Positions 17,840 through 53,100 of a stretch of 64,000 bases of DNA are shown piece by piece. Position 1 is the stretch's first letter. Every line of letters starts with the position of its first letter. This stretch comes from Amphiscolops sp. MND2022 (lineage: Eukaryota): the NCBI GenBank assembly GCA_964187785.1, contig OZ076416.1, forward strand, positions 25,792,001 to 25,856,000, written 5' to 3'. A program made the position numbers and the translations under genes. The notes under the pieces were generated by a model. That model was not told where the DNA came from and did not search any database. It saw only the letters and a list, made by a program, of their open reading frames with translations.

Positions 17840-18136
17840 GGTACTCCTGATCAAAAGTGGTCCCGAGCGATTTCTCCTGACTAAGTGTGGTACCTGCATA
17901 TTTTGTCGGAATTATTGTAACGTCGTCAGCTATGTTCACACCTAGTGGCCTAAATGCAGGAGCGAAGCGAAGGGAGCGACGTGCCATATGGCAATGCCTC
18001 AATGTTGTTACTTGGCGAAGGGAGCGAAGCGACCGAGCCGTACAACAAATATGCTAACCTCTTCTAGGGACCACACTTAGGAGTTTTCAGGCCGGCTGCA
18101 TAAATTTTGTAGGGACCACACTTAGTCAGGAGTACC
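17840..18136. mobile_element. Merlin-like MITE (GGTAC termini)
   Basis: TIR GGTACTCCTGA...TCAGGAGTACC. AACTTTTC flanks both sides, offset by 3 nt (TTC) on the left. Confidence 0.7.
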
Positions 18137-33049: not shown

Positions 33050-33829
33050 AGTTACATGAATTGAAAAAATTGAGATTAGAATATTTAGCTAGCTTCGTAT
33101 CGATATATATCCAGAGAGAAGCCTTAAAATAGAAAAACCGGTAGTGCCAAAAACTAAGGGGGAAATCACCACAAAGATATCATCTAGTATCACGCGCACA
33201 TGCTTAGCCAGACGAAAATGAAACTCTCTATCACAAACTCAGTTCATTGACTCATTATGAACCTGGCAGAAAGTATGGAATACAAAACAGGATGAAAAAT
33301 ACTTCTTTCTACATAACATCCGAATTAAACAATGTTTTTGTTTTTGCACAGAAATCAAGGACACGTTTCTGACAATTCATTTCGCACTAGAAAAGTCACT
33401 GTCAGCCGAAGATTTTTCGGGAGTTTCCAGAAATATAAGCAATTGAAGAAAGCCGTTCGTTTCTTCTGTTTTTTTTTCATCTTAAAAATGATAAAAGAAC
33501 CGCGTGTGCCGAACTCGGTGTTTGCTGTGGAAAGACATTTTGTGCTCTTATTACAAGGAGGGCGTGTCAGAAAAGAGTTTGGGTCTCAGTACGCTGCAAA
33601 GCCTCATTGCAGTTTCAATAACGGTCACATAAAATTTGGAAATTATTGGTAAGTGGATTGTAATTTATGAATGAGGACAATGTATCACAAACTATATTGA
33701 TGGTCGGAAATTACTTGGTTCCACGGAAAGACCCGAGGGATTGTCAGATTTATGACAACCCTCTCTCGTGAACTATAACACTGATAGATGACTCTACAAT
33801 TACTTGTTGACGGCGTTTCGACTTGCAGT

Positions 33830-35300
33830 CTGAGACAGAGATCGGAACTACGTAGAAAAACAAATTATCTTGATCCTAATTGAGATTATCGCGTCCAAGA
33901 AACATTCTGAATCTTTTCCGTTGATTTTTTCAGCTAGTCGGGTGACTACTTTCGTGGCTGATGGTCCAGCGCCACCTGTACGCGCAAAGACTAGGGGGTT
34001 AAGGTTACTTTTCTCAAGCTTTATTATTCTGGTTTTTGAGAGATTCATGAAACATATGCCTCGTTGAAATCTTTGGGATATGTTCTGGCGAGTGGGTTGA
34101 CAATTTGACGTCAAAAAAGTTCTACAGAAACGAGAGTACCAAAGCACGTTTGTACGCTAGTGTCGCATCTGGGTATACCCTCCTTTGTTGTATTGGAGGG
34201 AACGTGAGAGCCTGAAAACATCACGGGGACACATTACCGGTGTTTTCAGTGGTTCCCACTCATAGCGCAGAGGTAAACCGTAGCGGAATTCTTTTCTCGA
34301 TAGATCAAAATAATATCGTTTGAGCAGCAGAGCGTTGAGCCAGCTTGATAGATCCAGTGGGCATCGTTGCTTTTCATCGAGTTCAGTTCTGCCGTCCGCC
34401 ATAAGCAAGAAAAAAGGTTCATCAGTGATGTCACGTCGGCCCTTTATTGCTGTGATCAAGTGCTCCTTGACTTTCCTTTCCGTTCCTCCGAAATTATCTT
34501 TGAAATTAGGGGTCGTACGCCCTACAATCTGATTGTATTCACTTTGTTTCTGAATTTGTTGCGAACAGATTCTGATACTATTACCGAGGGTCTAACTTCA
34601 ATTACTGAGTTCATCAATTTTAACCTCTGCTCTGTCGAATAGATTTTGAGCTTGTTTTATGTGTTCGGTTTTTGCAATGTTGCTATACCTTGCTAGTATG
34701 TAGCCGAAAGCCGGTCCGTGCTATTTCAATGCTATGAACTCCAAGGATCTCGAACTGTTTCCTGAAACTGTGTATAGCATGTTCGATTTCGCATTTCTGA
34801 CCGAGATAAGTTGTTGATTTTTGTTCAAGAGCTTCACAGCGCAGTATGCATTTTCCTATGATCCGCCTGGGAACTTCTCCAACCGCAAATAGCCGCAACC
34901 CTGGGATCTTGTCAAGGGGTATCAAACGACAGGTATTGTACAGCCTCAGTATTTCACTATCAATTTCTTCAAGAGCGATCCTCACAAATACGAAAAATGT
35001 AATTGCTTTGATTCCGGTAAAAGATACAGTTCTTAGTAAAGAAAAAACATAGAAAGCGATCCGACAAATACCCTCTCGATGACGTTCCTAGGATACTTCG
35101 AGAACCTATTACTAGAATAGTCCGGGCTTCAACAACTAAGTTAGGAACCAACACTATAAGCATTCTCTGTCTTCTTCTCTTTCATTATCCAATTTCAATT
35201 AGCCTAATTGTTGTGATAAACTTATTAAATAGGCTTCTCCCTTTCTTTTTCACAAACTTGATCTGTTTCATATCCTTATGCGCGCTGGGCCTGAACAAAC
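33830..35300 (-). mobile_element. Old, internally deleted CRE-like non-LTR retrotransposon (antisense to the young copy)
   Basis: Frameshifted fragments: VPNLVVEART; LIPLDKIPGLRLFAVGEVPRRIIGK; GQKCEIEHAIH; SSWLNAL..KR..F.LSRKEFRYGLPLRY.WEP; KGGYTQMRH; NPLVFARTGGAG. Confidence 0.8.
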
Positions 35301-38300
35301 TTTGGTTACTGTCGAAAAGTCTCACCATCCCAGCCGTAGGTGAGCAGAACCTGGACAGCTCTTGAGCTTTTATCCCAAATTAAAGGTGCGGCGAGGCACA
35401 AGAAGGAGAGGAACCTGCAACCAACCGCCCCAAGCATCATCGCCAGGTTGTACCTCTCCTGTTTCTATCATTTTCAACTTGATTGAACTTGAATTTTTAC
35501 CTAAGTCCTTTTTGTTTTAGATTTTTGATTTTTTTTAAATTTTTTATAAAAGAATTTAAATTTTTTTTAATTGTGGAAAAAAAATTTTCATGAATTTTTA
35601 ACCTTGAAGTTCTTTCAAATGCGCTTCGGATACTGCTTCAATCTTGTTTTAGCATCATGTGCCGATTTGAACCAAGAAGACTAAACCCAAGAACGACAAA
35701 TTTGGTTATCGGAACCTCTCGAACTAAATACATCAAAGCCAACGAAGTTGGTGCTGCAATACACTCCTACAGAGGCGCGAACCTGAGTGAATTGAGCCAT
35801 GTTATCGAAAGTTACCCGCATCAGCAATTGAGTACTGTTATTGTTGTAGCTGGCTTCAACGACCATCGAAAATCCCCGGCCACTTTTGTAGAAAATTGGA
35901 AATACATTATTCAGCTGATCTACTGGAAATTCAACCCCTCAACGGTCATAATCCAAAAGACTATTGCAACTGCTAACGATTCAATCACCAACCGACGTAT
36001 CTATTGGCTGAACTTCGCTCTACATAAGCTCCTAGGCTCACTGAATCTACCCATTGTGTCACCAAATTTTAATCGTGATTTTGACACCAAGATATTCTGC
36101 CGTGACGGAGTTCACTTTTCCTTCTTCCTCAGCATTATCTTCGATGAAGTTGCCGAAAAATCGCGAAACTCGAATGTAGCACTTTACTTCGCGATGGTAA
36201 TGCCCCATCTAGTTCTGGCCCGTACGAAAGAGAAACGTGAAACATCCATCGGAAAAACCATTCAAAGACGAATGGAAGCATGGCTTAGCTGCGAATTCGA
36301 GGCGCTCTTCAACGAAGCAAAGGCACTGCAGCTACGTATACCAAAAGTGCGGAAAACCCAGAACCGCGATGAAATGAAAAGTTTTGACATCCAAATGTCA
36401 TCAGGGAAAATCTCAAATGCATTGCGGTGTCTGGATGAGTCTCAGAAAGGCAACGTCCTCTCGCTGCAAGAAAGAGTGGGAAACAAAACCGTAATGCAAA
36501 TCCTTCAGGAGAAACACCCGAAACCGATGACATCAAAAGACAGCTACGTCACTAACGAAAATGACCACACCATCGAACACCATCACAGTATTTTCGACAA
36601 AATCAACGCCTCGACAGTCCGAAAAACAGCCATGGTAACGCAAGGTAGCCACGGACCATCCGGCGTCGACGCCAACGACTGGCGCAGGTAGCTTTCACAG
36701 TTCGGTCAAGCATCCACGAACCTCTGCAAGGCTCTTGCGGCATTTGCCCGGAGGCTCGCAACAAAACAAATGCATGATCTAACTCCCTACAACGCATGCC
36801 GTCTCATACCGGTTGACAAAAACCCAGGTGTCAGACCAATCGGAGTGGGCGAAGTCATCAGACGCATAATTGGGAGGAACATTCTTCGATGCATCGGGAA
36901 CGATCTCAAGATCTTGGGCCAGAATAGGCAACTCTGCCTTGGTCAAAAATGTGGCATCGAACACGCCATTCACAGTCTACGTGAGACGTTCGAGCTGCCA
37001 GAGACAGAAGGGCTTCTCCTGATTGACGCCAAAAACGCGCTCAATAGTCTAAATAGGGATCTGGCCCTGAAAAACATTCAGAAAACCTGTCCATCCATCA
37101 TAACAGCCCTCCGAAACTCATATGGTACACCTTCAAACCTTTACGTGAATGGGAAAACTCTCTTGTCGCAAGAAGGAACTACTCAAGGCGACCCTTTGGC
37201 TATGTCCATGTATGGCATTGCGCTTCTACCGTTAATGGACCTCGTGAACGAAGAAGGAGTGCTACAAAAATGGTATGCTGACGATGGCAATGTAGCCGGT
37301 AGCATCGAATCGCTTCGAAATCTCTTCGAAAAACTGAAGCTCCACGGTCCCGCATTTGGATACAACATCACTAAATGCCATCTCATCACGAAAAATTCCT
37401 CCCTTGACAAAGCAAAAGACCTCTTTAAAGACGAGGATGTTGAACTAGTGGTAGGACACCGTGTTCTGGGTTCCGTTATTGGATCGCCCGAAGCCTGTCA
37501 CGCTTTCCAGTCCTCCAAACTCACTGAGTACACGAACATTGTAAACAAACTTGCGTCACATGCGAAAAAGTCACCACAGAATGTCTATCATGCATTTACA
37601 AAAGGTGTTCAACACAAACTCACCTTCCTGTCAAGAACAACACCTGACATGGAAAACACACTGCAAAACACCGAATCTCTTAACGACGAAACTGATCCCT
37701 AACATCACCGGCCGTGGTGAGTTATCTATAGCAGAACGTTCTCTTTTCTCCCTACCGCTCAGCAAAGGTGGGCTGAATATCCTTTCACCCGAAGACAGAA
37801 GAAACGATCTGCAGTGGTCAAAGGATGTTACTTCTCATCTAGATGAAGAGGATCTAACCACCGCTGAAGCGAAGCAACACTCAACAGTAAACATGATAAA
37901 GAAACAGAAGCAAGAAATTCAAAAAACTAAGCTTGAAGAAGTCAAATGCAACTTGAATGACGAACAACGACACGCAGTTACACTTGTTTCGGAAAAACGA
38001 GCATCGAGCTGGCTAGCCGCCCTCCCACTGAAACGCCATGGTTTCACTCTTACGAAGTCTGAATTTCGGGACGGTCTCGCGCTGCGCTACGGTTGGGAGC
38101 CAAAGAATTTACCTGCCAAATGCCCATGTGGTGAACCCTTCACTGTTGCCCATTCCCTACACTGCGGAAAAGGAGGCTACACTCACTTGAGACATGACGA
38201 AATACGCGATACGTTCGCAAAGATAATGAAAGACGTTTGCTTCGACGTTGAGGTGGAGCCGAAACTTCAGAGGTTAGAAGGGGAATCCTTCGAATATAAA

Positions 38301-41300
38301 TCAACTTGCACTGAAGATGAAGCTCGTCTCGATATCAGAGCAAATGGACTATTTCAATGCTATGAACTCCAAGGATCTCGAACTGTTTCCTGAAACTGTG
38401 TATAGCATGTTCGATTTCGCATTTCTGACCGAGATAAGTTGTTGATTTTTGTTCAAGAGCTTCACAGCGCAGTATGCATTTTCCTATGATCCGCCTGGGA
38501 ACTTCTCCAACCGCAAATAGCCGCAACCCTGGGATCTTGTCAAGGGGTATCAAACGACAGGTATTGTACAGCCTCAGTATTTCACTATCAATTTCTTCAA
38601 GAGCGATCCTCACAAATACGAAAAATGTAATTGCTTTGATTCCGGTAAAAGATACAGTTCTTAGTAAAGAAAAAACATAGAAAGCGATCCGACAAATACC
38701 CTCTCGATGACGTTCCTAGGATACTTCGAGAACCTATTACTAGAATAGTCCGGGCTTCAACAACTAAGTTAGGAACCAACACTATAAGCATTCTCTGTCT
38801 TCTTCTCTTTCATTATCCAATTTCAATTAGCCTAATTGTTGTGATAAACTTATTAAATAGGCTTCTCCCTTTCTTTTTCACAAACTTGATCTGTTTCATA
38901 TCCTTATGCGCGCTGGGCCTGAACAAACTTTGGTTACTGTCGAAAAGTCTCACCATCCCAGCCGTAGGTGAGCAGAACCTGGACAGCTCTTGAGCTTTTA
39001 TCCCAAATTAAAGGTACGGCGAGGCACAAGAAGGAGAGGAACCTGCAACCAACCGCCCCAAGCATCATCGCCAGGTTGTACCTCTCCTGTTTCTATCATT
39101 TTCAACTTGATTGAACTTGAATTTTCGACCATCGAAAATCCCCGGCCACTTTTGTAGAAAATTGGAAATACATTATTCAGCTGATCTACTGGAAATTCAA
39201 CCCCTCAACGGTCATAATCCCAAAGACTATTGCAACTGCTAACGATTCAATCACCAACCGACGTATCTATTGGCTGAACTTCGCTCTACATAAGCTCCTA
39301 GGCTCACTGAATCTACCCATTGTGTCACCAAATTTTAATCGTGATTTTGACACCAAGATATTCTGCCGTGACGGAGTTCACTTTTCCTTCTTCCTCAGCA
39401 TTATCTTCGATGAAGTTGCCGAAAAATCGCGAAACTCGAATGTAGCACTTTACTTCGCGATGGTAATGCCCCATCTAGTTCTGGCCCGTACGAAAGAGAA
39501 ACGTGAAACATCCATCGGAAAAACCATTCAAAGACGAATGGAAGCATGGCTTAGCTGCGAATTCGAGGCGCTCTTCAACGAAGCAAAGGCACTGCAGCTA
39601 CGTATACCAAAAGTGCGGAAAACCCAGAACCGCGATGAAATGAAAAGTTTTGACATCCAAATGTCATCAGGGAAAATCTCAAATGCATTGCGGTGTCTGG
39701 ATGAGTCTCAGAAAGGCAACGTCCTCTCGCTGCAAGAAAGAGTGGGAAACAAAACCGTAATGCAAATCCTTCAGGAGAAACACCCGAAACCGATGACATC
39801 AAAAGACAGCTACGTCACTAACGAAAATGACCACACCCTCGAACACCATCACAGTATTTTCGACAAAATCAACGCCTCGACAGTCCGAAAAACAGCCATG
39901 GTAACGCAAGGTAGCCACGGACCATCCGGCGTCGACGCCAACGACTGGCGCAGGTAGCTTTCACATTTCGGTCAAGCATCCACGAACCTCTGCAAGGCTC
40001 TTGCGGCATTTGCCCGGAGGCTCGCAACAAAACAAATGCATGATCTAACTCCCTACAACGCATGCCGTCTCATACCGGTTGACAAAAACCCAGGTGTCAG
40101 ACCAATCGGAGTGGGCGAAGTCATCAGACGCATAATTGGGAGGAACATTCTTCGATGCATCGGGAACGATCTCAAGATCTTGGGCCAGAATAGGCAACTC
40201 TGCCTTGGTCAAAAATGTGGCATCGAACACGCCATTCACAGTCTACGTGAGACGTTCGAGCTGCCAGAGACAGAAGGGCTTCTCCTGATTGACGCCAAAA
40301 ACGCGTTCAATAGTCTAAATAGGGATCTGGCCCTGAAAAACATTCAGAAAACCTGTCCATCCATCATAACAGCCCTCCGAAACTCATATGGTACACCTTC
40401 AAACCTTTACGTGAATGGGAAAACTCTCTTGTCGCAAGAAGGAACTACTCAAGGCGACCCTTTGGCTATGTCCATGTATGGCATTGCGCTTCTACCGTTA
40501 ATGGACCTCGTGAACGAAGGAGTGCTACAAAAATGGTATGCTGACGATGGCAATGTAGCCGGTAGCATCGAATCGCTTCGAAATCTCTTCGAAAAACTGA
40601 AGCTCCACGGTCCCGCATTTGGATACAACATCACTAAATGTCATCTCATCACGAAAAATTCCTCCCTTGACAAAGCAAAAGACCTCTTTAAAGACGAGGA
40701 TGTTGAACTAGTGGTAGGACACCGTGTTCTGGGTTCCGTTATTGGATCGCCCGAAGCCTGTCGCGCTTTCCAGTCCTCCAAACTCACTGAGTACACGAAC
40801 ATTGTAAACAAACTTGCGTCACATGCGAAAAAGTCACCACAGAATGTCTATCATGCATTTACAAAAGGTGTTCAACACAAACTCACCTTCCTGTCAAGAA
40901 CAACACCTGACATGGAAAACACGCTGCAAAACACCGAATCTCTTAACGACGAAACTGATCCCTAACATCACCGGCCGTGGTGAGTTATCTATAGCAGAAC
41001 GTTCTCTTTTCTCCCTACCGCTCAGCAAAGGTGGGCCGAATATCCTTTCACCCGAAGACAGAAGAAACGATCTGCAGTGGTCAAAGGATGTTACTTCTCA
41101 TCTAGATGAAGAGGATCTAACCACTGCTGAAGCGAAGCAACACTCAACAGTAAACATGATAAAGAAACAGAAGCAAGAAATTCAAAAAACTAAGCTTGAA
41201 GAAGTCAAATGCAACTTGAATGACGAACAACGACACGCAGTTACACGTGTTTCGGAAAAACGAGCATCCAGCTGGCTAGCCGCCCTCCCACTGAAACGCC

Positions 41301-41611
41301 ATGGTTTCACTCTTACGAAGTCTGAACTTCGGGACGGTCTCGCGCTGCGCTACGGTTGGGAGCCAAAGAATTTACCTGCCAAATGCCCATGTGGTGAACC
41401 CTTCACTGTTGCCCATTCCCTACACTGCGGAAAAGGAGGCTACACTCACTTGAGACATGACGAAATACGCGATACGTTCGCAAAGATAATGAAAGACGTT
41501 TGCTTCGACGTTGAGGTGGAGCCGAAACTTCAGAGGTTAGAAGGGGAATCCTTCGAATATAAATCAACTTGCACTGAAGATGAAGCTCGTCTCGATATCA
41601 GAGCAAATGGA
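34721..41611. repeat. Tandem duplication: 3,628-bp unit (34721-38348) plus 3,263-bp unit (38349-41611)
   Basis: Junction GGACT|ATTTC with CT microhomology. The length difference equals a 362-bp plus a 3-bp deletion in unit 2. Confidence 0.92.
35657..38348 (+). mobile_element. CRE-like non-LTR retrotransposon copy 1 with N-terminal SGNH esterase; inactivated and 3'-truncated by the duplication junction
   Basis: Esterase blocks VIGTS, SYRGA, AGFND, DGVH. RT motifs RPIGVGEVIRRII, GTTQGDPLAM, WYADD. CPCG...H...C knuckle and RHDEIRD. In-frame TAG at 36689 and frameshift at ~37683. Confidence 0.9.
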
Positions 41612-42023
41612 CTCTGGGATTCACGATTCTCGAGAACGTTTTTTGACGTCAAAATTTTTAACCCGCTGGCCAAGTCCTGTCCGAAAGAAGTAAAGGAAGC
41701 GTATAAATATCATGAAACTTTGAAAAAACTGAAGTACGAACAGAGAATCCTTGATTTTGGAAAACAGCTCATTCAATCCTCTTGTCTTCGCGTGTTCAGG
41801 AGGCGCAGGTCCTTCAGCCTCGAAAGTTATGTCCCGATTTGCTCTGAAGATCAGCGAAAAAGGACAAGACAGCTACTCGGACGCCATAGGATACATCAGG
41901 ACGCAAATTAGCTTCGCTTTGTTACGCAGTTCCGTGCTATGCCTCAGAGGATCTCGATCTATTCGCCGTCAAACTGAGGAATCATCTATCTCTGCAATGG
42001 TTGAAGAGGGAAGGTTGTCGTGA
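39126..42023 (+). mobile_element. CRE-like element copy 2 with complete 3' end (REL endonuclease)
   Basis: Same lesions as copy 1 plus a frameshift at ~41757. REL motifs RLDI...FDVKIFNP and KKLKY. ORF ends EEGRLS*. Esterase blocks I-III removed by a 362-bp deletion. Confidence 0.9.
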
Positions 42024-42735
42024 CTTACCTCGACGATCCTAATTTGGTGATTCCTGCGATATATTTACCGCCGATGTTTTTTAAAATTATGATACGATGC
42101 CCTAATTTATAAATCTCTCCTCCACTTGATGTTCTTGGTGCTTGTTTCATTCAGGGGACCGTTTTTGACACTGTATGGAGGCTCTGCAGCTTGCAGCGAT
42201 CTGGCACCTTGCCTATCTTTTTCTGACTGCCCATGCTTCAACTCGGGCTAATTCTATTTCGTAAAGACCCTTTTAAAATGGTTCCAGTTATAAGCATTCT
42301 CTGTTGGAAAAACTACAAAACTGGCATGGAGCAATTCAACGTGGCACAAAAAGTGAAAAGTTTTCGTCATTTTCGAGATAAACGAAACTGAGACAAAAGT
42401 AAAAACTACTTCAATGCAAGCAGGAGAGCAGCATTAAAAGTACGATTAATCTCAATAACTCGGCGTACGAAAGCATAATTACGAACATTCTCTCGCCCCA
42501 TCTCAATGAATTCGGCGAACGAATGCATAATACCACTCGTTCGTTTCATCGCACGAGAAACGAATTGTTGTAGGCAGCTTAAGAAATTTAAATCTCACGC
42601 TTATACTCACTGCCGAACAAAATATCTGAATTTTTCAGTTGGTACTCGGATCGCTAACAAAAGTCGGGCTAAAAAAAGTTGCATAATTCAGATTTCTATA
42701 TATTCCGGCTATCGCAGAAATAATTTAAAAAAATA

Positions 42736-42907
42736 CAGTCAACTCCGGCTAATTCGTATCCGGATAATTCGGATCTTCGTTTAATTCGTACGTGTCTGAG
42801 ACCCATTTCGCGAAGACCAAAGAAATATCATCCGGATAATTCGTATTTCTCCTTATCCGTGCTATTTTATTCGGTCCCCAGCGATACGAATTAGGCGGAT
42901 TCAACTG
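42736..42907. mobile_element. pogo/Tigger-like MITE (172 bp, TA TSD); duplicate at 48755-48926
   Basis: TA|CAGTCAACTCCGGCTAATTCGTAT ... ATACGAATTAGGCGGATTCAACTG|TA, 20 of 24 TIR match. Confidence 0.82.
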
Positions 42908-43257
42908 TAGTAATATTTCTGCTTTAGGCTACAAAAACCATCAATCTCAAAGTTCAATGATATAAACATATCTGAAACAACTATACGCTGCTGATAATTC
43001 ATTAATTAATCACTACCCGGTTATACTTGTTTTGATGCTTCTTGGACTATAATCGTTAAGACTCGTTCGCATCATCTCAGTAAAATGGCTACCTCACTGC
43101 TACCAGAATTGGCGACGTAAAAGGGACAATCGAAGTCTGGTATGTTTCTTGAATTGCGTGAAAATCTCACAGCACCAAAAAATATTGAAAAAGGGAACTT
43201 TTTCCAAATAAGAATTTTTTAAAAACCAAAGGGATATACATCAAATTTGGTACTTAC

Positions 43258-44121
43258 TGCTTCGAGATAATCGGCAGGGATTTTCGATTTATCACAAACT
43301 GCAGGCTGGCTGACAAAAAATGTATCTTGTGCATCCCTAGCAGGATGTTGTTGTGGCTGGAAAAGGGCGTCAAAGTTCCAGAAAGAACTTTCAACGAAGT
43401 TGTTGGTAGGCATTTCCGTGAACCCCATCTCAAGAAATATATTTCTGAATTCACTGCGAACTTTCATTAGTGGATGGAGATGACCAGAATCAGGTATTAC
43501 TCCTTTAGCTGCAAAATTGTACTTCTTGAAAGTTTCATCTTTCCATGTTCCACTTGCAAGCATGTCAGACGTTAGGTCAGTGGCCAATTTTTTCGTTTCA
43601 AGAGAAAAATTTTCACCTTTCTCCACACGATAAAACTTCTCAAGTCGTTTCTCTACAAGCTTTCTTTTCTTGTAATCGTCGAGGGTTTTCGGAGGTACAA
43701 GGTCACCAATACTTAGTTTTTCAAGATTCAGTCGGACATCGTCTATAATCGAATCTGTGATTTTCAAAACTTTACCACTTGATTTGTCTAATTTCAGCCA
43801 CTTTTTTGAAGAAGCTTTTCCGAAAGCGACTGCAAAATCTGGGAATGATGACTTAACTTCCTCCAAAGTAGCACCATCTGCTGGTAAATGCGCAAATAGC
43901 TGGGCTTCTAGACTACCGTTTTGTAAGCATTTGTTACCTTCTGCAGTTAGTATCCACTTTTCCTCACTTTTTTCAGAGCACACTATCAAGTCACCAGCAG
44001 ACTGTAAACTTTTCAAAGAACCGACAACCTCTTGATGATCAACTAGAAAGGACTTAGCCAACTGTCTAGAGTCATCGATCACATGATCTTTCTCCAATTT
44101 TTCCAAGATTGCTTTATCCAT
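43258..44121 (-). CDS. FARSA: FARSA 5' exon, proximal duplicate
   Basis: GHLHPLMKVRSEFRNIFLEMGFTEM, WNFDALFQPQQHPARDAQDTFF. Donor GCA|GTAAGT (phase 0) fits the terminal exon. A 2-bp deletion lies just upstream of this ATG. Confidence 0.9.
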
Positions 44122-45228
44122 AACAAACTGAAACCAATTTCATGAGTGAATATCATTGTCTCATTTTATCATACAGATGCATTGAAACATTTTAAAACCT
44201 CTCTCAGATGACATAGATCGTCGTTAATAATGTGGTGCCATGTAAGTCATCATGTAGGGGAGGATGGCACACACATCGTGGTCTGCAAACAAAAGGGAAC
44301 GAAATAAACAACAAAGCGCTACTACCACTAGATCATAACCAAGTCGACGAAGATTCACAACCCACGTTGAATAGTCGAGTTGCAAAGATGAGAGTCAGTC
44401 CCAATGAACAGTACTATATTATAAACTTCAATCGCATCTCTAGCTCTCACTGTTTCTAGGATACCCCGAAAATGACCTTGTGTCAAAATGCCGGTTTTTG
44501 GCATTTTGACTTTCAAACGCGATATCTTGCATATGCAGTGTATATACACTCGCCCTCTCCGCAACAATCGTTTCGAGATCTCCGATGCCGCTAGGTCTTT
44601 GCTCCTGTTCGACTAACAACGTGAATAACGTCTAAAAGTCCACCGGGAAAGACGTCTCAAGCAATAAACTAAAAAGATTACCGTCTGAAAATTCGTATAA
44701 AAAATGGAACAAAAGAAGGAACGTCTTAAAAGTGAAACATCTAAAATCGAGAAAAGGTCCAAAATCAACAAAAACGTCCAAATATCAGAAAATCATAAAA
44801 TTAGGACTTCGAAACGAGAACTACGTCCAAAACTGGGGAAAAACTGCAGCCAATTAGAATCACAAACAAAAAGTTGGGAACAAAAAGATCAGGAACAAAA
44901 AGTTATTTAAAGGGTTACAAGTCAGTTGGCCTTAAGTGCAATTGGCTTGATTTTTTTCCTCGAGTCATTTGGATTGAAATTTTTCAGCCAAAGAACCACA
45001 AAGTGGAGCCAAGTCCATTCTAACTCAAGCAATGACTAAATACAACTAAGTCCTAATTGTTGTGATGAACTTATCAAATAGTTTGTGTTGACTCTCGTCC
45101 CGGAGCAACCCGTTTACTTCGATTGGCCTAGATGTAGGTATTAGGTTTTCAGGGTAAGTTTCGTTCGCCTCCAGAGTTATAGTGTTAGACGTTTGACCAG
45201 ACAGAGAGTCTATTTTTGGGGTGGGCGG

Positions 45229-45556
45229 AAATAGGTCGAAGGAACGGGATCGAAAATCAGAGTTAGTCCTCAGGTCGACATACCAATTTTTGAATGGGAT
45301 CGAAACAACTCGGGTCGAAATTTTTATAACGTAGTCAGATATGTTCACATACCCCTAGTGCCCTGAATGCAGGAGCAAAGCGAAGCGGAGCAACTTGCCA
45401 TATGGCCATGCCTCAATGTTGCTACTTGGCGAAGGGAGCGAAGCGACCGAGCCATACAACAAATACGATAAAATTCGACCGCATTCCATTCGATCCCTGC
45501 AATTCGATCAAAAGGTTCGACCTCTGTCCTTTCGACCAGGAAAATTCGACCTATTT
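45229..45556. mobile_element. MITE with GGTCGA/TCGACC-rich inverted arms around the shared core; duplicate at ~51250-51577
   Basis: AAATAGGTCGAA / TTCGACCTATTT perfect 12-bp inverted repeat, with several internal (G)GTCGA/GATCGA motifs mirrored on the right. Confidence 0.65.
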
Positions 45557-46824
45557 ACAGCCATCCATATTTTTGAAAACAGATTTTCGATCATTTTAAG
45601 GATTTCTCTGTCCCATTTAAGTGTCTTTCATCCTTCTATAAACAGATTTCTCGATTTTCTCAGATAGTTCGGAGAGCTACGTGGAATCAGGTTTAATTAG
45701 ATAGATCTAAGAGAGGGGGCTAAACTGGGATCTAAATAAATTGATATAATTAGTCAGGTCTAAAAATTGCTTCTAATTTGATCTGATTTGAGAAAAAATC
45801 AGTCAATTAGGATCTGAAACTAAAAAGTGATACAAAGTATAAAACGTGCCCCGGATATGTCCCCATTTCCTCTAGTGCCCCGCGGCCCCTTGGGGCCGCT
45901 TATATTCCCATCTTGCTAAGCGAGGTCGAACAGGAGCAAAGACCTAGCGGAAACGGAGATCGCGAAGTGATCGTAGTGGGAGCTGGTCTTTGCGACGGTG
46001 AGGACGAGCGTGCATACATCGCATATGCCCCACCTTATATTTTCGCTTTCAGAACACATAATAGATCATGAAGGGGTTAGACCTAAGTATTTTAGATCAA
46101 ATTAGATCTGAACGTTAGACCTAACAGTTAGATCTAATTCCATTAGACCCGCGGCAATTAGATCAAAGGCCTGCACTCCAGTTCGGAGAAATCTTTATCA
46201 GAGATACTAGGAACATTCTCCGTTCTCATACTTGGGGCTTCAGGTTCGTCTATGGAACTAGTGGGTGAATCCCGCCTTGCTCTCATTTTAGACGATCTTT
46301 CAGGCATTTTGAGTTCGGAATTTCAGAATAGTAAAGAAGAACAGCGCAAAGGACCTGCTAACTAGCACAGAAATTGGAGTTTTCAAAGTTTAATCATTAG
46401 AACGAAAGACAAAAGATTCGCAAAAAAATAATTATCAACTGAAAATCACTTCCAATTTCCATCATCTTTTGACTTTTCCGCTCGCAAAAGCGTGAGAAAA
46501 TATGTGCACTTTTCACGCCTTGTTCAGCCCGGCGTTCATCCGAGGCAGGGAAACTGGAAGCTTAGTTAGGCTTTGCCGAAATCAGACATTCAGCTTGTTC
46601 ATGCTTCTCGAAGGAAACACGCATCCACTTCCCGTCTGTGTTGCGACTCCGCTTCCCTTCACTCCCAATTCCCGCTATTTCAAGACGCCGCAGCTGAACT
46701 TGGCAATGAAATTGAGGATGATTCATCAATTTACTGCTGAATGAAAAATTCAAATCGGAAAATGACACGCAATATTTGCAAAATGTTTCTCGAATTAATT
46801 AAACAACATTAAAGATGCTTCACG

Positions 46825-48042
46825 AAACAAACTTGCGTCACATGCGAAAAAGTCACCACAGAATGTCTATCATGCATTTACAAAAGGTGTTCAACACAAA
46901 CTCACCTTCCTGTCAAGAACAACACCTGACATGGAAAACACGCTGCAAAACACCGAATCTCTTAACGACGAAACTGATCCCTAACATCACCGGCCGTGGT
47001 GAGTTATCTATAGCAGAACGTTCTCTTTTCTCCCTACCGCTCAGCAAAGGTGGGCCGAATATCCTTTCACCCGAAGACAGAAGAAACGATCTGCAGTGGT
47101 CAAAGGATGTTACTTCTCATCTAGATGAAGAGGATCTAACCACTGCTGAAGCGAAGCAACACTCAACAGTAAACATGATAAAGAAACAGAAGCAAGAAAT
47201 TCAAAAAACTAAGCTTGAAGAAGTCAAATGCAACTTGAATGACGAACAACGACACGCAGTTACACGTGTTTCGGAAAAACGAGCATCCAGCTGGCTAGCC
47301 GCCCTCCCACTGAAACGCCATGGTTTCACTCTTACGAAGTCTGAACTTCGGGACGGTCTCGCGCTGCGCTACGGTTGGGAGCCAAAGAATTTACCTGCCA
47401 AATGCCCATGTGGTGAACCCTTCACTGTTGCCCATTCCCTACACTGCGGAAAAGGAGGCTACACTCACTTGAGACATGACGAAATACGCGATACGTTCGC
47501 AAAGATAATGAAAGACGTTTGCTTCGACGTTGAGGTGGAGCCGAAACTTCAGAGGTTAGAAGGGGAATCCTTCGAATATAAATCAACTTGCACTGAAGAT
47601 GAAGCTCGTCTCGATATCAGAGCAAATGGACTCTGGGATTCACGATTCTCGAGAACGTTTTTTGACGTCAAAATTTTTAACCCGCTGGCCAAGTCCTGTC
47701 CGAAAGAAGTAAAGGAAGCGTATAAATATCATGAAACTTTGAAAAAACTGAAGTACGAACAGAGAATCCTTGATTTTGGAAAACAGCTCATTCAATCCTC
47801 TTGTCTTCGCGTGTTCAGGAGGCGCAGGTCCTTCAGCCTCGAAAGTTATGTCCCGATTTGCTCTGAAGATCAGCGAAAAAGGACACGACAGCTACTCGGA
47901 CGCCATAGGATACATCAGGACGCAAATTAGCTTCGCTTTGTTACGCAGTTCCGTGCTATGCCTCAGAGGATCTCGATCTATTCGCCGTCAAACTGAGGAA
48001 TCATCTATCTCTGCAATGGTTGAAGAGGGAAGGTTGTCGTGA
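46825..48042 (+). mobile_element. CRE-like element copy 3 (3' part only, created by the 6-kb duplication)
   Basis: Near-identical to 40806-42023, with one substitution seen (~47889). Confidence 0.9.
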
Positions 48043-49276
48043 CTTACCTCGACGATCCTAATTTGGTGATTCCTGCGATATATTTACCGCCGATGTTTTT
48101 TAAAATTATGATACGATGCCCTAATTTATAAATCTCTCCTCCACTTGATGTTCTTGGTGCTTGTTTCATTCAGGGGACCGTTTTTGACACTGTATGGAGG
48201 CTCTGCAGCTTGCAGCGATCTGGCACCTTGCCTATCTTTTTCTGACTGCCCATGCTTCAACTCGGGCTAATTCTATTTCGTAAAGACCCTTTTAAAATGG
48301 TTCCAGTTATAAGCATTCTCTGTTGGAAAAACTACAAAACTGGCATGGAGCAATTCAACGTGGCACAAAAAGTGAAAAGTTTTCGTCATTTTCGAGATAA
48401 ACGAAACTGAGACAAAAGTAAAAACTACTTCAATGCAAGCAGGAGAGCAGCATTAAAAGTACGATTAATCTCAATAACTCGGCGTACGAAAGCATAATTA
48501 CGAACATTCTCTCGCCCCATCTCAATGAATTCGGCGAACGAATGCATAATACCACTCGTTCGTTTCATCGCACGAGAAACGAATTGTTGTAGGCAGCTCA
48601 AGAAATTTAAATCTCACGCTTATACTCACTGCCGAACAAAATATCTGAATTTTTCAGTTGGTACTCGGATCGCTAACAAAAGTCGGGCTAAAAAAAGTTG
48701 CATAATTCAGATTTCTATATATTCCGGCTATCGCAGAAATAATTTAAAAAAATACAGTCAACTCCGGCTAATTCGTATCCGGATAATTCGGATCTTCGTT
48801 TAATTCGTACGTGTCTGAGACCCATTTCGCGAAGACCAAAGAAATATCATCCGGATAATTCGTATTTCTCCTTATCCGTGCTATTTTATTCGGTCCCCAG
48901 CGATACGAATTAGGCGGATTCAACTGTAGTAATATTTCTGCTTTAGGCTACAAAAACCATCAATCTCAAAGTTCAATGATATAAACATATCTGAAACAAC
49001 TATACGCTGCTGATAATTCATTAATTAATCACTACCCGGTTATACTTGTTTTGATGCTTCTTGGACTATAATCGTTAAGACTCGTTCGCATCATCTCAGT
49101 AAAATGGCTACCTCACTGCTACCAGAATTGGCGACGTAAAAGGGACAATCGAAGTCTGGTATGTTTCTTGAATTGCGTGAAAATCTCACAGCACCAAAAA
49201 ATATTGAAAAAGGGAACTTTTTCCAAATAAGAATTTTTTAAAAACCAAAGGGATATACATCAAATTTGGTACTTAC

Positions 49277-50164
49277 TGCTTCGAGATAATCGGCAGGGAT
49301 TTTCGATTTATCACAAACTGCAGGCTGGCTGACAAAAAATGTATCTTGTGCATCCCTAGCAGGATGTTGTTGTGGCTGGAAAAGGGCGTCAAAGTTCCAG
49401 AAAGAACTTTCAACGAAGTTGTTGGTAGGCATTTCCGTGAACCCCATCTCAAGAAATATATTTCTGAATTCACTGCGAACTTTCATTAGTGGATGGAGAT
49501 GACCAGAATCAGGTATTACTCCTTTAGCTGCAAAATTGTACTTCTTGAAAGTTTCATCTTTCCATGTTCCACTTGCAAGCATGTCAGACGTTAGGTCAGT
49601 GGCCAATTTTTTCGTTTCAAGAGAAAAATTTTCACCTTTCTCCACACGATAAAACTTCTCAAGTCGTTTCTCTACAAGCTTTCTTTTCTTGTAATCGTCG
49701 AGGGTTTTCGGAGGTACAAGGTCACCAATACTTAGTTTTTCAAGATTCAGTCGGACATCGTCTATAATCGAATCTGTGATTTTCAAAACTTTACCACTTG
49801 ATTTGTCTAATTTCAGCCACTTTTTTGAAGAAGCTTTTCCGAAAGCGACTGCAAAATCTGGGAATGATGACTTAACTTCCTCCAAAGTAGCACCATCTGC
49901 TGGTAAATGCGCAAATAGCTGGGCTTCTAGACTACCGTTTTGTAAGCATTTGTTACCTTCTGCAGTTAGTATCCACTTTTCCTCACTTTTTTCAGAGCAC
50001 ACTATCAAGTCACCAGCAGACTGTAAACTTTTCAAAGAACCGACAACCTCTTGATGATCAACTAGAAAGGACTTAGCCAACTGTCTAGAGTCATCGATCA
50101 CATGATCTTTCTCCAATTTTTCCAAGATTGCTTTATCCATAACAGAAACTGAAACCAATTTCAT
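49277..50164 (-). CDS. FARSA: FARSA 5' exon, distal duplicate
   Basis: Coding sequence appears identical to 43258-44121 by eye. Open from ATG 50164 (MKLVSVSV-MDK, second ATG at 50140). Confidence 0.9.
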
Positions 50165-53100
50165 GAGTGAATATCATTGTCTCATTTTATCATACAGATG
50201 CATTGAAACATTTTAAAACCTCTCTCAGATGACATAGATCGTCGTTAATAATGTGGTGCCATGTAAGTCATCATGTAGGGGAGGATGGCACACACATCGT
50301 GGTCTGCAAACAAAAGGGAACGAAATAAACAACAAAGCGCTACTACCACTAGATCATAACCAAGTCGACGAAGATTCACAACCCACGTTGAATAGTCGAG
50401 TTGCAAAGATGAGAGTCAGTCCCAATGAACAGTACTATATTATAAACTTCAATCGCATCTCTAGCTCTCACTGTTTCTAGGATACCCCGAAAATGACCTT
50501 GTGTCAAAATGCCGGTTTTTGGCATTTTGACTTTCAAACGCGATATCTTGCATATGCAGTGTATATACACTCGCCCTCTCCGCAACAATCGTTTCGAGAT
50601 CTCCGATGCCGCTAGGTCTTTGCTCCTGTTCGACTAACAACGTGAATAACGTCTAAAAGTCCACCGGGAAAGACGTCTCAAGCAATAAACTAAAAAGATT
50701 ACCGTCTGAAAATTCGTATAAAAAATGGAACAAAAGAAGGAACGTCTTAAAAGTGAAACATCTAAAATCGAGAAAAGGTCCAAAATCAACAAAAACGTCC
50801 AAATATCAGAAAATCATAAAATTAGGACTTCGAAACGAGAACTACGTCCAAAACTGGGGAAAAACTGCAGCCAATTAGAATCACAAACAAAAAGTTGGGA
50901 ACAAAAAGATCAGGAACAAAAAGTTATTTAAAGGGTTACAAGTCAGTTGGCCTTAAGTGCAATTGGCTTGATTTTTTTCCTCGAGTCATTTGGATTGAAA
51001 TTTTTCAGCCAAAGAACCACAAAGTGGAGCCAAGTCCATTCTAACTCAAGCAATGACTAAATACAACTAAGTCCTAATTGTTGTGATGAACTTATCAAAT
51101 AGTTTGTGTTGACTCTCGTCCCGGAGCAACCCGTTTACTTCGATTGGCCTAGATGTAGGTATTAGGTTTTCAGGGTAAGTTTCGTTCGCCTCCAGAGTTA
51201 TAGTGTTAGACGTTTGACCAGACAGAGAGTCTATTTTTGGGGTGGGCGGAAATAGGTCGAAGGAACGGGATCGAAAATCAGAGTTAGTCCTCAGGTCGAC
51301 ATACCAATTTTTGAATGGGATCGAAACAACTCGGGTCGAAATTTTTATAACGTAGTCAGATATGTTCACATACCCCTAGTGCCCTGAATGCAGGAGCAAA
51401 GCGAAGCGGAGCAACTTGCCATATGGCCATGCCTCAATGTTGCTACTTGGCGAAGGGAGCGAAGCGACCGAGCCATACAACAAATACGATAAAATTCGAC
51501 CGCATTCCATTCGATCCCTGCAATTCGATCAAAAGGTTCGACCTCTGTCCTTTCGACCAGGAAAATTCGACCTATTTACAGCCATCCATATTTTTGAAAA
51601 CAGATTTTCGATCATTTTAAGGATTTCTCTGTCCCATTTAAGTGTCTTTCATCCTTCTATAAACAGATTTCTCGATTTTCTCAGATAGTTCGGAGAGCTA
51701 CGTGGAATCAGGTTTAATTAGATAGATCTAAGAGAGGGGGCTAAACTGGGATCTAAATAAATTGATATAATTAGTCAGGTCTAAAAATTGCTTCTAATTT
51801 GATCTGATTTGAGAAAAAATCAGTCAATTAGGATCTGAAACTAAAAAGTGATACAAAGTATAAAACGTGCCCCGGATATGTCCCCATTTCCTCTAGTGCC
51901 CCGCGGCCCCTTGGGGCCGCTTATATTCCCATCTTGCTAAGCGAGGTCGAACAGGAGCAAAGACCTAGCGGAAACGGAGATCGCGAAGTGATCGTAGTGG
52001 GAGCTGGTCTTTGCGACGGTGAGGACGAGCGTGCATACATCGCATATGCCCCACCTTATATTTTCGCTTTCAGAACACATAATAGATCATGAAGGGGTTA
52101 GACCTAAGTATTTTAGATCAAATTAGATCTGAACGTTAGACCTAACAGTTAGATCTAATTCCATTAGACCCGCGGCAATTAGATCAAAGGCCTGCACTCC
52201 AGTTCGGAGAAATCTTTATCAGAGATACTAGGAACATTCTCCGTTCTCATACTTGGGGCTTCAGGTTCGTCTATGGAACTAGTGGGTGAATCCCGCCTTG
52301 CTCTCATTTTAGACGATCTTTCAGGCATTTTGAGTTCGGAATTTCAGAATAGTAAAGAAGAACAGCGCAAAGGACCTGCTAACTAGCACAGAAATTGGAG
52401 TTTTCAAAGTTTAATCATTAGAACGAAAGACAAAAGATTCGCAAAAAAATAATTATCAACTGAAAATCACTTCCAATTTCCATCATCTTTTGACTTTTCC
52501 GCTCGCAAAAGCGTGAGAAAATATGTGCACTTTTCACGCCTTGTTCAGCCCGGCGTTCATCCGAGGCAGGGAAACTGGAAGCTTAGTTAGGCTTTGCCGA
52601 AATCAGACATTCAGCTTGTTCATGCTTCTCGAAGGAAACACGCATCCACTTCCCGTCTGTGTTGCGACTCCGCTTCCCTTCACTCCCAATTCCCGCTATT
52701 TCAAGACGCCGCAGCTGAACTTGGCAATGAAATTGAGGATGATTCATCAATTTACTGCTGAATGAAAAATTCAAATCGGAAAATGACACGCAATATTTGC
52801 AAAATGTTTCTCGAATTAATTAAACAACATTAAAGATGCTTCACGAAACAACGATTATATCAACAAAATGGCAAATTAGCTTGCAATTCCACTTACAAAA
52901 CATCTACAGCAGTGAATGAGTGAAAACTGAAAAAATCTTGGTCCCAGACCGCAGACCGGGACGTTTGGGAAAGTGAACAGAATTTCACAGGGAAAGAAAC
53001 AATAGTATGAGACAAAATCACGTTAAAAGTACTGCTCAGGTTGATATCTAGTACAATCAAATGGCAATTGGTTCGGGAGAAAAGTTTCACGTGACATTAG

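What the first reader, a model, noticed from the sequence alone, without database searches (positions are those of the whole stretch)
35657..36691. SGNH/GDSL esterase fused in frame to a CRE-type (REL-endonuclease) retrotransposon ORF
Seen: one open frame carries all four SGNH blocks with an intact Ser-Asp-His triad (VIGTS ~35711, SYRGA, AGFND ~35852, DGVH ~36104). It then runs into the CRE pre-RT region (FAMVMPHLVLART...RRMEAWL). Established: SGNH esterases occur in ORF1 of some APE-type non-LTR clades (CR1, L2, RTEX), whereas REL-type CRE elements typically have a single ORF with N-terminal zinc fingers. Inference: this is either an unusual esterase-RT-REL architecture or a chimera. The junction (HFSF|FLSIIFDE, ~36125) seems to lack part of the usual CRE N-terminus, so a 5'-truncated insertion or deletion landing in frame by chance (1 in 3) remains the null.
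Basis: partly seen in the sequence, partly recalled or inferred. Interest (0 to 1): 0.75.

Follow-up and report, generated by a model that had tools for sequence, protein, structure and literature searches.

The report
Deleted copy of esterase-carrying RLE LINE
The "esterase fused to a reverse-transcriptase ORF" is a dead, internally deleted copy of a jumping gene; intact relatives keep the esterase as a separate first gene, which is itself unusual for this old restriction-like-endonuclease class of elements.

Summary
Window 35657-36691 is one 344-codon frame with all four SGNH blocks that runs into the pre-RT region.

The fusion is private to this locus. The junction 27-mer occurs twice in the 1.07-Gb genome, both times in this window, in two halves of a local duplication. 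At 30 or more other loci the two halves lie about 530 bp apart. A 531-bp (177-codon) deletion removed the end of ORF1, three in-frame stops and the PHD-finger start of ORF2. The copy also carries a TAG at 36689 before the RT domain, a later frameshift and a 3' truncation, so it is dead.

The ~4.35-kb element is flanked by 11-16 bp target-site duplications (TSDs). It encodes:
- a separate 180-aa SGNH esterase ORF1 (pLDDT 92.6; Z 18.9 to PAF-AH);
- an ORF2 with a PHD finger, RT, and a CCHC plus PD-(D/E)xK endonuclease whose model matches only R2 proteins strongly.

Three diverged families keep the same layout. The nearest esterase outside them (39% identity) is the ORF1 of an APE-type LINE in the same genome.

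CRE-clade membership could not be tested. The scan has already noted this family on other DNA of this genome.

The parts
35155..35170 (+). Upstream copy of the 16-bp target-site duplication (TATAAGCATTCTCTGT). It is followed by 30 untemplated or extra nt before the element's 5' end. It is repeated at 38783-38798 in the duplicated flank.
   Evidence: a 16-nt exact match between the 5' and 3' flanks. In 300 shuffles the longest match was at most 10, mostly 5-7.
35201..38350 (+). Copy A of the element. It has the full 5' end, carries the 531-bp internal deletion, and is cut off at 38350 just after the ARLDIRA motif of the endonuclease.
   Evidence: (alignment to full copies L031-L034).
35201..35656 (+). 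5' UTR of about 456 nt. It starts with the family's conserved terminus AGCCTAATTGTTG.
   Evidence: the same 5' terminus sits next to unrelated flanks in L031-L034 and in the window.
35657..36126 (+). ORF1 remnant: SGNH esterase residues 1-156 with blocks I, II, III and V intact. The C-terminal helix and the stop codon are lost.
36126..36127 (+). Deletion junction. 531 bp (177 codons) are missing relative to family copies: the ORF1 C-terminus, three in-frame stops, the ORF2 ATG, the PHD finger and the linker.
   Evidence: L034 2133 to 2665, L032 2129 to 2661; 38 other hits break at this point; the 27-mer occurs only twice in the genome; contigs from other runs run on into the undeleted sequence on both sides.
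36127..36688 (+). ORF2 pre-RT region, read in frame with the ORF1 remnant.
36689..36691 (+). TAG nonsense codon where family copies have Trp (WRRW). It ends the fused frame before the RT domain. Copy B has the same codon at 39955-39957.
36770..37702 (+). RT domain (TQGDPLAM 37181-37204, YADD 37274-37285). A frameshift follows near 37680-37700.
   Evidence: (RVT_1, E 1.5e-7).
37551..38350 (+). Linker, CCHC (38121-38165), RHD (38190-38210), EVEP and ARLD of the restriction-like endonuclease. It is truncated before the DVK motif.
   Evidence: One search gives the fold of the homologous region.
38349..38828 (+). Second copy of the upstream flank 34721-35200. It marks a 3628-bp local tandem duplication made after the insertion.
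   Evidence: 100% identity.
38829..42288 (+). Copy B of the element. It has the same 531-bp deletion (junction 39392|39393), the same TAG and the same frameshift. It has lost a further 362 bp (equivalent to 35498-35859, i.e. the ORF1 start). It retains the full 3' end: CCHC 41384-41428, FFDVKIF 41639-41659 and the C-terminal LLRSS..RGSR motif 41919-41957.
42289..42304 (+). Downstream copy of the 16-bp target-site duplication.
33753..34985 (-). Older fragment of a related RLE LINE on the minus strand (RT to C-terminus, 37-76% identity to P0065). It lies just upstream of the insertion. Part of it is duplicated at 38377-38613.
46825..48307 (+). Third copy of the element's 3' part, carried along by the 6019-bp tandem duplication 40806-46830 / 46825-52851.

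Best explanation
The 344-codon frame is a dead, locus-specific deletion product. It is not an architecture. The parent family is a young, abundant LINE of about 4.35 kb. Its layout is:
- a 5' UTR of about 460 nt;
- ORF1, a bare 180-aa SGNH esterase;
- three stops within 17 codons;
- ORF2 of about 1030 aa in the same frame, holding a PHD finger, a pre-RT region, RT, a linker, a CCHC motif, a PD-(D/E)xK restriction-like endonuclease and a conserved C-terminal helical module.

Shown steps:
1. One copy inserted at window ~35170, leaving a 16-bp target-site duplication.
2. It lost 531 bp (exactly 177 codons) between the DGVHFSFF motif of ORF1 and the LSIIFDE motif of ORF2. Because ORF1 and ORF2 share a frame, the remnants fused.
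3. It also acquired a TGG-to-TAG change at 36689 and a frameshift.
4. A 3.6-kb local tandem duplication then produced copies A and B, and copy B lost a further 362 bp.

Inferred mechanism for the intact family:
- Both ORFs are translated from one bicistronic RNA, with ORF2 read by reinitiation after the short spacer.
- ORF1p acts as a lipid- or membrane-directed esterase, as shown for the ZfL2-1 ORF1p.
- ORF2p nicks the target with its RLE and primes reverse transcription there. A staggered second-strand cut gives the 11-16 bp duplications.
- The PHD finger may steer the protein to particular chromatin.
For: Junction is private to this locus:
- An exact 27-mer search with up to 2 mismatches finds 2 places in 1.07 Gb, both in this window.
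- The 140-bp junction probe has 38 other scored hits, and all of them break at position 70/71.
- The 1203-bp probe splits at 629/630 at 30 or more loci on 13 chromosome-scale contigs plus unplaced contigs, with about 500-540 bp between the halves.
- Contigs from four other sequencing runs continue on both sides of the junction into the undeleted family sequence.

Family structure:
- Searches show it. At least 12 copies share the spacer M*IIELYI*LT*QPSLNSMADQTHC.

It is a retrotransposon:
- The 5' terminus is identical next to unrelated flanks.
- TSDs of 11, 12 and 16 bp flank the unit.
- 5' truncations fall at varied points.

Domain identities:
- Esterase.
- PHD: C4HC3 pattern invariant; profile hits KDM5B, PHF23 and PHF13 PHD fingers at E 2.5e-4 to 5e-4.
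- RT: RVT_1; the ORF2 profile hits R2 proteins at 5.5e-7 and no L1.
- RLE: CCHC, RH(N/D), E-P, (R)LD and D-V-(K/R) columns invariant in 25 homologues; the model (pLDDT 84) has R2 proteins as its only strong matches (E 1e-7 to 7e-6, TM 0.50-0.55), then Prp8 and PA endonuclease.

The copy is dead:
- Both window copies share the TAG at 36689 and the frameshift.
Against: - The junction was not seen in independent read data. Only Logan contigs were available, and those drop rare variants. The deletion and the tandem duplication therefore rest on this one assembly.
- None of the four full-length copies I examined has an uninterrupted ORF2. The two-ORF structure in this family is pieced together from copies, although sister family L035 has both ORFs intact.
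- The window ORF itself gets no Pfam hit. Family members reach Lipase_GDSL_2 only below the curated cut-off.
- No expression data exist.
Confidence: 0.9

Rival explanations
1. A genuine single-ORF esterase-RT-RLE architecture: the fusion seen here is how the family is built.
For: The frame is open across the junction, and the catalytic Ser, Asp and His are all present.
Against: The junction is unique in the genome. Every other copy has stops between the esterase and ORF2. The fused frame ends at a TAG before RT. Copy B has already lost the esterase start.
Confidence: 0.02
2. A chimera of two unrelated elements: the esterase belongs to a CR1/L2/RTEX-type APE LINE that happens to abut a 5'-truncated RLE element.
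For: An APE-type LINE with a coiled-coil plus esterase ORF1 does live in this genome (P0048: 100% identical at 8 or more places; context in L038).
Against: That esterase is only 39% identical to the one here. The esterase here is 92-100% identical to the ORF1 found upstream of the RLE ORF2 at 30 or more loci. TSDs enclose the 5' UTR, ORF1 and ORF2 as a single unit. Sister families L035, L040 and L041 keep the same order. No APE-type sequence follows the element's 3' end.
Confidence: 0.03
3. An assembly artefact: the 531-bp deletion and/or the tandem copies come from collapsed or mis-joined repeats rather than from real DNA.
For: The region is highly repetitive, with nested 3.6-kb and 6-kb tandem duplications at 99.4-99.9% identity. 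No independent contig bridges the junction.
Against: Copies A and B both carry the junction yet differ at about 15 positions and by a 362-bp indel, as expected of real diverged duplicates. Breakpoints are clean, and one TSD pair frames the whole structure.
Confidence: 0.05

Closest known systems
Esterase-type ORF1p LINEs of the CR1, L2 and RTEX clades (e.g. zebrafish ZfL2-1; Kapitonov & Jurka 2003; Schneider et al. 2013, PMC3905857)
   Same: An SGNH esterase is encoded as a gag-position ORF1 upstream of the RT ORF, with catalytic S, G, N, D and H conserved. CR1-like elements also have a PHD finger. The nearest non-RLE relative of this esterase (39% identity) is the ORF1 of an APE-type LINE in the same genome.
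   Different: ORF2 here has no APE nuclease and carries a C-terminal CCHC plus PD-(D/E)xK nuclease instead. ORF1 is the bare esterase domain, with no N-terminal coiled coil or arginine-rich linker. The PHD finger sits at the start of ORF2. The family profile does not retrieve the ZfL2-1 esterase chain (4c1b) from the PDB at E <= 10.
R2 elements (R2Bm, R2Tg; PDB 8gh6, 9dou, 9nl2/3)
   Same: The order RT, linker, CCHC, RLE is the same, and R2 proteins are the only strong fold matches and the best profile matches. Insertion leaves TPRT hallmarks.
   Different: There are no N-terminal C2H2 or Myb domains. The element is not rDNA-specific, since flanks are unrelated. It has two ORFs. It has an extra conserved C-terminal module of about 110 aa (FxPLVF..GG.G...LLRS..C.RG.R). 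RT similarity to R2 is weak (E about 1e-6 with a profile).
CRE clade (CRE1/2, SLACS, CZAR; MoTeR)
   Same: It is an RLE-type LINE that makes target-site duplications, as reported for all known CRE elements (PMC3636483). From my memory, not checked here, SLACS and CZAR also have two ORFs.
   Different: There is no spliced-leader or telomere target specificity. The N-terminus is a PHD (C4HC3) finger rather than C2H2 fingers. ORF1 is an esterase. RT-tree placement was not tested.
GDSL/SGNH ORFs of Penelope-like Athena elements and Vesta LTR retrotransposons of bdelloid rotifers (PMC5408684)
   Same: They are further cases of an SGNH esterase recruited as an accessory ORF by a retroelement.
   Different: They belong to different retroelement classes, and the esterase there is an ORF3 or an internal domain. 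That paper found those esterases do not cluster with LINE esterases.
PAF acetylhydrolase Ib catalytic subunits (PDB 1wab, 1vyh)
   Same: They are the best structural matches to ORF1p: Z 18.9, rmsd 2.4-2.8 A over 172-178 residues.
   Different: Sequence identity is 13-15%. They are cellular enzymes with no link to mobile elements.

Membership tests
SGNH/GDSL hydrolase superfamily (ORF1) | Four conserved blocks with catalytic Ser (I), Gly (II), Asn (III) and Asp-x-x-His (V) | tested here: met
   GTS, YRGA, GFND and DGVH are present in the window. S21, G40 and D150 are invariant, and N68 and H153 are at least 90% conserved, in 33 homologues.
SGNH/GDSL hydrolase superfamily (ORF1) | Three-layer alpha/beta/alpha SGNH fold | tested here: met
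   pLDDT 92.6. 114 Foldseek hits at E <= 0.001; all 43 listed rows are SGNH/GDSL-type proteins apart from one designed scaffold. VIA Z 18.9 to PAF-AH.
SGNH/GDSL hydrolase superfamily (ORF1) | Pfam Lipase_GDSL/Lipase_GDSL_2 hit above the curated cut-off | tested here: not met
   The window ORF has 0 families at E <= 1. 8 of 33 family members hit Lipase_GDSL_2; the best is 27.2 bits against a cut-off of 32.9.
SGNH/GDSL hydrolase superfamily (ORF1) | Hydrolytic activity | not testable with these tools
   This needs an enzyme assay.
Restriction-like-endonuclease (R2-group) LINEs | RT domain of LINE or group-II type | tested here: met
   RVT_1 at E 1.4e-9 to 1.5e-7. The profile hits R2 RTs at 5.5e-7 to 1e-5.
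Restriction-like-endonuclease (R2-group) LINEs | CCHC motif followed by a PD-(D/E)xK nuclease C-terminal to RT | tested here: met
   C165, C167, H175, C179, R188-H189, E210-P211, D235 and D252-V253 are invariant or nearly so. The top 7 fold matches are all R2 proteins, followed by Prp8 and PA endonuclease.
Restriction-like-endonuclease (R2-group) LINEs | No APE endonuclease | tested here: met
   The ORF2 N-terminus is a PHD finger, a linker of about 80 aa and the pre-RT region, with no Exo_endo_phos hit. As a positive control, the APE-type neighbour L038 scores 0.96 to Exo_endo_phos clusters.
Restriction-like-endonuclease (R2-group) LINEs | Single ORF (as stated in PMC3636483) | tested here: not met
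   There are two ORFs separated by stops. Both are intact in L035.
Restriction-like-endonuclease (R2-group) LINEs | TPRT hallmarks: variable TSD or target alteration, and 5' truncation | tested here: met
   TSDs of 11, 12 and 16 bp. 5'-truncated copies start at ORF1 nt 40, 171, 228, 267, 276, 389 and 408.
CRE clade | RT groups with CRE1/CRE2/SLACS/CZAR in an RT phylogeny | not testable with these tools
   No CRE, NeSL, R4 or Hero reference sequences could be fetched. Only R2 chains were reachable, through PDB searches.
CRE clade | Insertion makes target-site duplications | tested here: met
   PMC3636483 states this for all known CRE elements.
CRE clade | Target specificity (spliced-leader genes or telomere repeats) of the founding members | tested here: not met
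   The five insertion sites compared have unrelated flanks.
CR1/L2/RTEX esterase-type ORF1p | Coiled coil N-terminal to the esterase | tested here: not met
   ORF1p is 180 aa. The first strand starts at residue 15 and no helix precedes it. The APE-linked relative P0048 does have the N-terminal extension of about 40 aa.
CR1/L2/RTEX esterase-type ORF1p | Partner ORF2 with an N-terminal APE nuclease | tested here: not met
PHD finger (ORF2 N-terminus; deleted in the window copy) | C4HC3 zinc-ligand pattern and similarity to PHD fingers | tested here: met
   Seven of the eight ligand columns are invariant and the eighth is kept in 8 of 9 sequences. The top PDB profile hits are PHD fingers: KDM5B 2.5e-4, PHF23 3.2e-4, PHF13 4.8e-4. 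Pfam PHD reaches only E 0.023, below the cut-off.

The most novel reading that the evidence does not exclude
A whole lineage of restriction-like-endonuclease LINEs has stably carried an SGNH esterase ORF1 and a PHD finger. It comprises at least four families, 46-56% identical in ORF1 and 53-65% in ORF2, present in several assemblies. The papers I could reach describe these modules only for APE-type LINEs (CR1, L2, RTEX), Penelope-like elements and some LTR elements. ORF1 and ORF2 diverge in parallel, and the nearest outside esterase is an APE-LINE ORF1. Together these point to one ancient swap of an ORF1 module between the two great LINE divisions.
Probability: 0.55. Interest if true: 0.6.

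Novelty: new variant of a known kind. Interest (0 to 1): 0.42.

Why it matters
For this locus the result is housekeeping. The striking fused frame is a decayed copy and should not be annotated as a gene or cited as a new architecture.

At family level it would extend esterase-type ORF1 proteins to the early-branching RLE LINEs. Reviews describe that group as single-ORF elements (PMC3636483) and list esterases only for CR1, L2, RTEX, Penelope-like and Vesta elements (PMC3905857, PMC5408684). This would show that ORF1 modules move between LINEs with unrelated integration machinery. It would also provide a minimal esterase ORF1p, 180 aa with no coiled coil, for testing what lipid hydrolysis or membrane binding contributes to retrotransposition.

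Tried and rejected
- Pfam on the window ORF gave nothing. The SGNH call rests on the family alignment and the fold.
- phmmer of ORF2 against the PDB found only a group-II intron RT at E 0.08. A profile was needed to reach R2.
- Sequence searches did not confirm the APE domain of the neighbouring LINE L038. Only the protein-language-model look-up did, with a score of 0.96.
- No RNA run holds the sequence. Laying contigs from four DNA runs showed the undeleted family sequence at both sides of the junction but no bridging contig, which neither confirms nor refutes the deletion.
- Two of the four paper searches, looking for an esterase described in CRE or RLE LINEs, found none. Repbase Reports are not in that library, so this is weak evidence of novelty.
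- I could not build an RT tree with clade references.
- I did not map the transposon-specific His/Ser pair of ZfL2-1 (H191, S228) onto this esterase, for lack of the 4c1b sequence. By spacing alone the position four residues before the block III Asn is Val, not His.
- P0072 (PHD-bearing ORF2, 51% identity) and the sponge homologue P0094 have no esterase upstream. The esterase is therefore not universal in the wider ORF2 family.
- I did not use the large representative-protein search, because identity was not in doubt.
Full report
**1. Observation**

One search lists an ORF at 35657..36691 (+, 344 aa). The motifs lie at VIGTS 35705-35719, SYRGA 35765-35779, AGFND 35849-35863 and DGVH 36104-36115.

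It ends at a TAG (36689-36691). That stop lies before the RT domain, which sits in the next ORF (36770-37702; Pfam RVT_1, E 1.5e-7) in the same frame.

**2. Local structure**

Self-comparison shows that the window holds local duplicates, not independent insertions.
- 34721-38349 is repeated at 38349 onward, with 99.4-100% identity.
- The second copy lacks 35498-35859.
- A separate 6019-bp tandem duplication (40806-46830 and 46825-52851, 99.9%) repeats the element's 3' part.
- Both element copies share the junction, the TAG and a later frameshift. All three lesions therefore predate the duplication.
- One 16-bp target-site duplication (35155-35170 and 42289-42304) frames the whole structure. 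In 300 shuffles the longest flank match never exceeded 10.

**3. The junction is private to this locus**

- A 1203-bp probe across the junction matched 74 places in the 1.07-Gb genome. Only the two window copies matched end to end. Everywhere else the match split exactly at probe position 629/630, which is window 36126|36127. The two halves lay about 500-540 bp apart at 30 or more loci, on 13 chromosome-scale contigs plus unplaced contigs.
- A 140-bp junction probe gave 38 further scored hits, all breaking at the junction.
- An exact 27-mer with up to two mismatches occurs twice in the genome, both times in this window, and zero times for the reversed control.
- Contigs from four other sequencing runs of the same organism run on from 36126 and into 36127 with the undeleted family sequence. 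None bridges the junction. Contigs drop rare variants, so this is only consistent with the reading and does not decide it.

**4. What was deleted**

Four full-length copies (L031-L034) align to the window from 35201 to 42289 and carry 531 extra bp at the junction. In L031 and L033 the figure is 520 and 530 bp, because of their own indels.

Translation gives the family plan:
- ORF1 of about 180 codons, ending ...FSFFGNHIFTRILSFYISHYSCNFIHM.
- Three stops within 17 codons.
- ORF2 in the same frame, starting MADQTHCSKCNG...

The deleted 177 codons hold the C-terminal helix of ORF1, the stops, the ORF2 start codon, a C4HC3 finger and a Pro/Thr-rich linker. ORF1 and ORF2 share a frame and the loss is a multiple of three, so the remnants fused.

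**5. ORF1 is a real SGNH esterase and a real part of the element**

- The word search found 64 homologues, mostly 175-180 aa.
- In 33 of them (38-94% identity), S21, G40 and D150 are invariant and N68, D69 and H153 are at least 90% conserved.
- With that alignment AlphaFold gives pLDDT 92.6.
- Foldseek returns SGNH/GDSL hydrolases almost without exception; the best is 2hsj at E 7e-7.
- VIA-align gives Z 18.9, rmsd 2.4 A over 172 residues, to PAF-AH Ib.
- Pfam support is weak: 8 of 33 members hit Lipase_GDSL_2, all below the curated cut-off.
- The model has no coiled coil. The first strand starts at residue 15.

The esterase lies inside the transposed unit.
- All full copies begin at the same terminus (AGCCTAATTGTTG...) next to unrelated flanks.
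- TSDs of 11, 12 and 16 bp enclose the 5' UTR, ORF1 and ORF2 together.
- Many copies are 5'-truncated at different points inside ORF1, as expected of target-primed reverse transcription.

**6. ORF2 is an RLE-type LINE protein**

- An alignment of 25 homologues (36-62% identity) shows invariant CCHC, RH(N/D), E-P, (R)LD and D-V-(K/R) columns C-terminal to RT. A conserved module of about 110 aa follows.
- The profile's best PDB hits are R2 proteins: 9nl3 at 5.5e-7, 9dou, 9nl2, and 8gh6 over the CCHC/RLE stretch. No L1 ORF2p appears.
- A model of the thumb-linker-RLE part of the intact sister protein P0065 has pLDDT 84. The window's own sequence was a row in its alignment.
- That model's only strong matches are the seven R2 entries (E 1e-7 to 7e-6, TM 0.50-0.55). 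Prp8 and the PA and MGME1 nucleases follow. This is the pattern the literature describes for RLE LINEs (PMC5678591).
- The N-terminal finger is PHD-like. Seven of its eight zinc-ligand columns are invariant and the eighth is kept in 8 of 9 sequences. Its profile hits the KDM5B, PHF23 and PHF13 PHD fingers at 2.5e-4 to 5e-4. Pfam stays below threshold.

**7. The layout is older than this family**

- L035 carries intact ORFs of 179 and 1017 codons, 25 nt apart. It comes from assembly ERZ25074608, which holds P0048; P0048 occurs at 100% identity in this genome.
- L040 and L041, from other assemblies, also have esterase ORF1 followed by PHD-RT-RLE.
- Pairwise identities run in parallel. Window against L035 is 56% in ORF1 and 65% in ORF2. 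The other pairs are 46-49% and 53-60%. This fits co-inheritance rather than repeated capture, but with only four families the support is limited.
- More distant ORF2 relatives differ. P0072 and a sponge protein have no esterase upstream. Those below 45% identity replace the PHD finger with another Cys-rich module.

**8. Where the esterase is related**

The only hit not linked to an RLE ORF2 is P0048.
- It has a coiled-coil-like N-terminal extension plus an esterase, and is 39% identical to the window family's ORF1 (BLASTP E 2e-38).
- It is the ORF1 of a conventional LINE (L038). That element's RT hits L1 and R2 at 1e-14 to 1e-18.
- Its ORF2 N-terminus scores 0.96 to Exo_endo_phos clusters. HMM searches gave nothing for that region.
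- P0048 is present at 100% identity at 8 or more places in this genome.

The RLE-linked esterases are therefore closest to an APE-LINE ORF1, and far closer to it than to any cellular SGNH protein. Neither the direction nor the date of the exchange is shown. The family profile does not retrieve the ZfL2-1 esterase from the PDB.

**9. Comparison with the literature**

- PMC3905857 reports transposon esterases in CR1, RTEX and Penelope-like elements, generally preceded by coiled coils.
- PMC5408684 adds Vesta LTR elements and Athena.
- PMC3636483 describes the R2 group (CRE, NeSL, R2, Hero, R4) as single-ORF elements, and states that CRE and R4 make TSDs.
- Two searches for an esterase in an RLE LINE found no report. 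Repbase Reports are not in the library.
- The CRE label itself remains untested here.

**10. Earlier notes of this scan**

Several notes on other DNA of this genome (s1-178863, s1-180143, s1-189761, s1-152427, s1-152461) describe the same family as an RLE LINE with an esterase ORF1 and a PHD finger. My tests agree on architecture. I add that this window's fused frame is a private deletion.

**11. Verdict**

- The finding's headline, an esterase fused in frame to the RT ORF, describes a dead copy and is not a real architecture.
- The underlying family is a new variant of a known kind.
- I built no family consensus and single out no copy as intact or restorable.

Noticed in passing
window 40806-46830 and 46825-52851: A 6019-bp tandem duplication at 99.9% identity. 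It repeats the 3' part of the element plus downstream host sequence.
   Followed up: partly
window 33753-34985 (-), with a partial duplicate at 38377-38613: An older, internally deleted fragment of a related RLE LINE on the opposite strand (37-76% identity to P0065), directly upstream of the insertion site.
   Followed up: partly
G000:C4:65551119-65551916 and 7 or more other places (L042-L047): An APE-type LINE whose ORF1 is a coiled-coil plus esterase protein (P0048) occurs with 100% identical ORF1 copies at 8 or more loci. It is therefore very young in this genome.
   Followed up: partly
L039:2239-8305 (ENA ERZ25071366): Three esterase ORF1 copies, each followed by only the PHD/N-terminal stub of ORF2, arranged head to tail with a 2762-bp period. 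This may be a tandemly amplified, internally deleted derivative.
   Followed up: partly
window 45314-45471, with copies near 17905, 18509, 20213, 21779 and 57560: A dispersed repeat of about 150 bp at 79-97% identity. It may be a SINE or MITE and was not characterised.
   Followed up: no
alignment A3, N-termini of P0079-P0174: ORF2 homologues below about 45% identity carry a different Cys-rich N-terminal module (CC.CN..G.C..C.C.K....C..C.P.R.G.C.N) in place of the PHD finger. The N-terminal module of this LINE group is therefore interchangeable.
   Followed up: no
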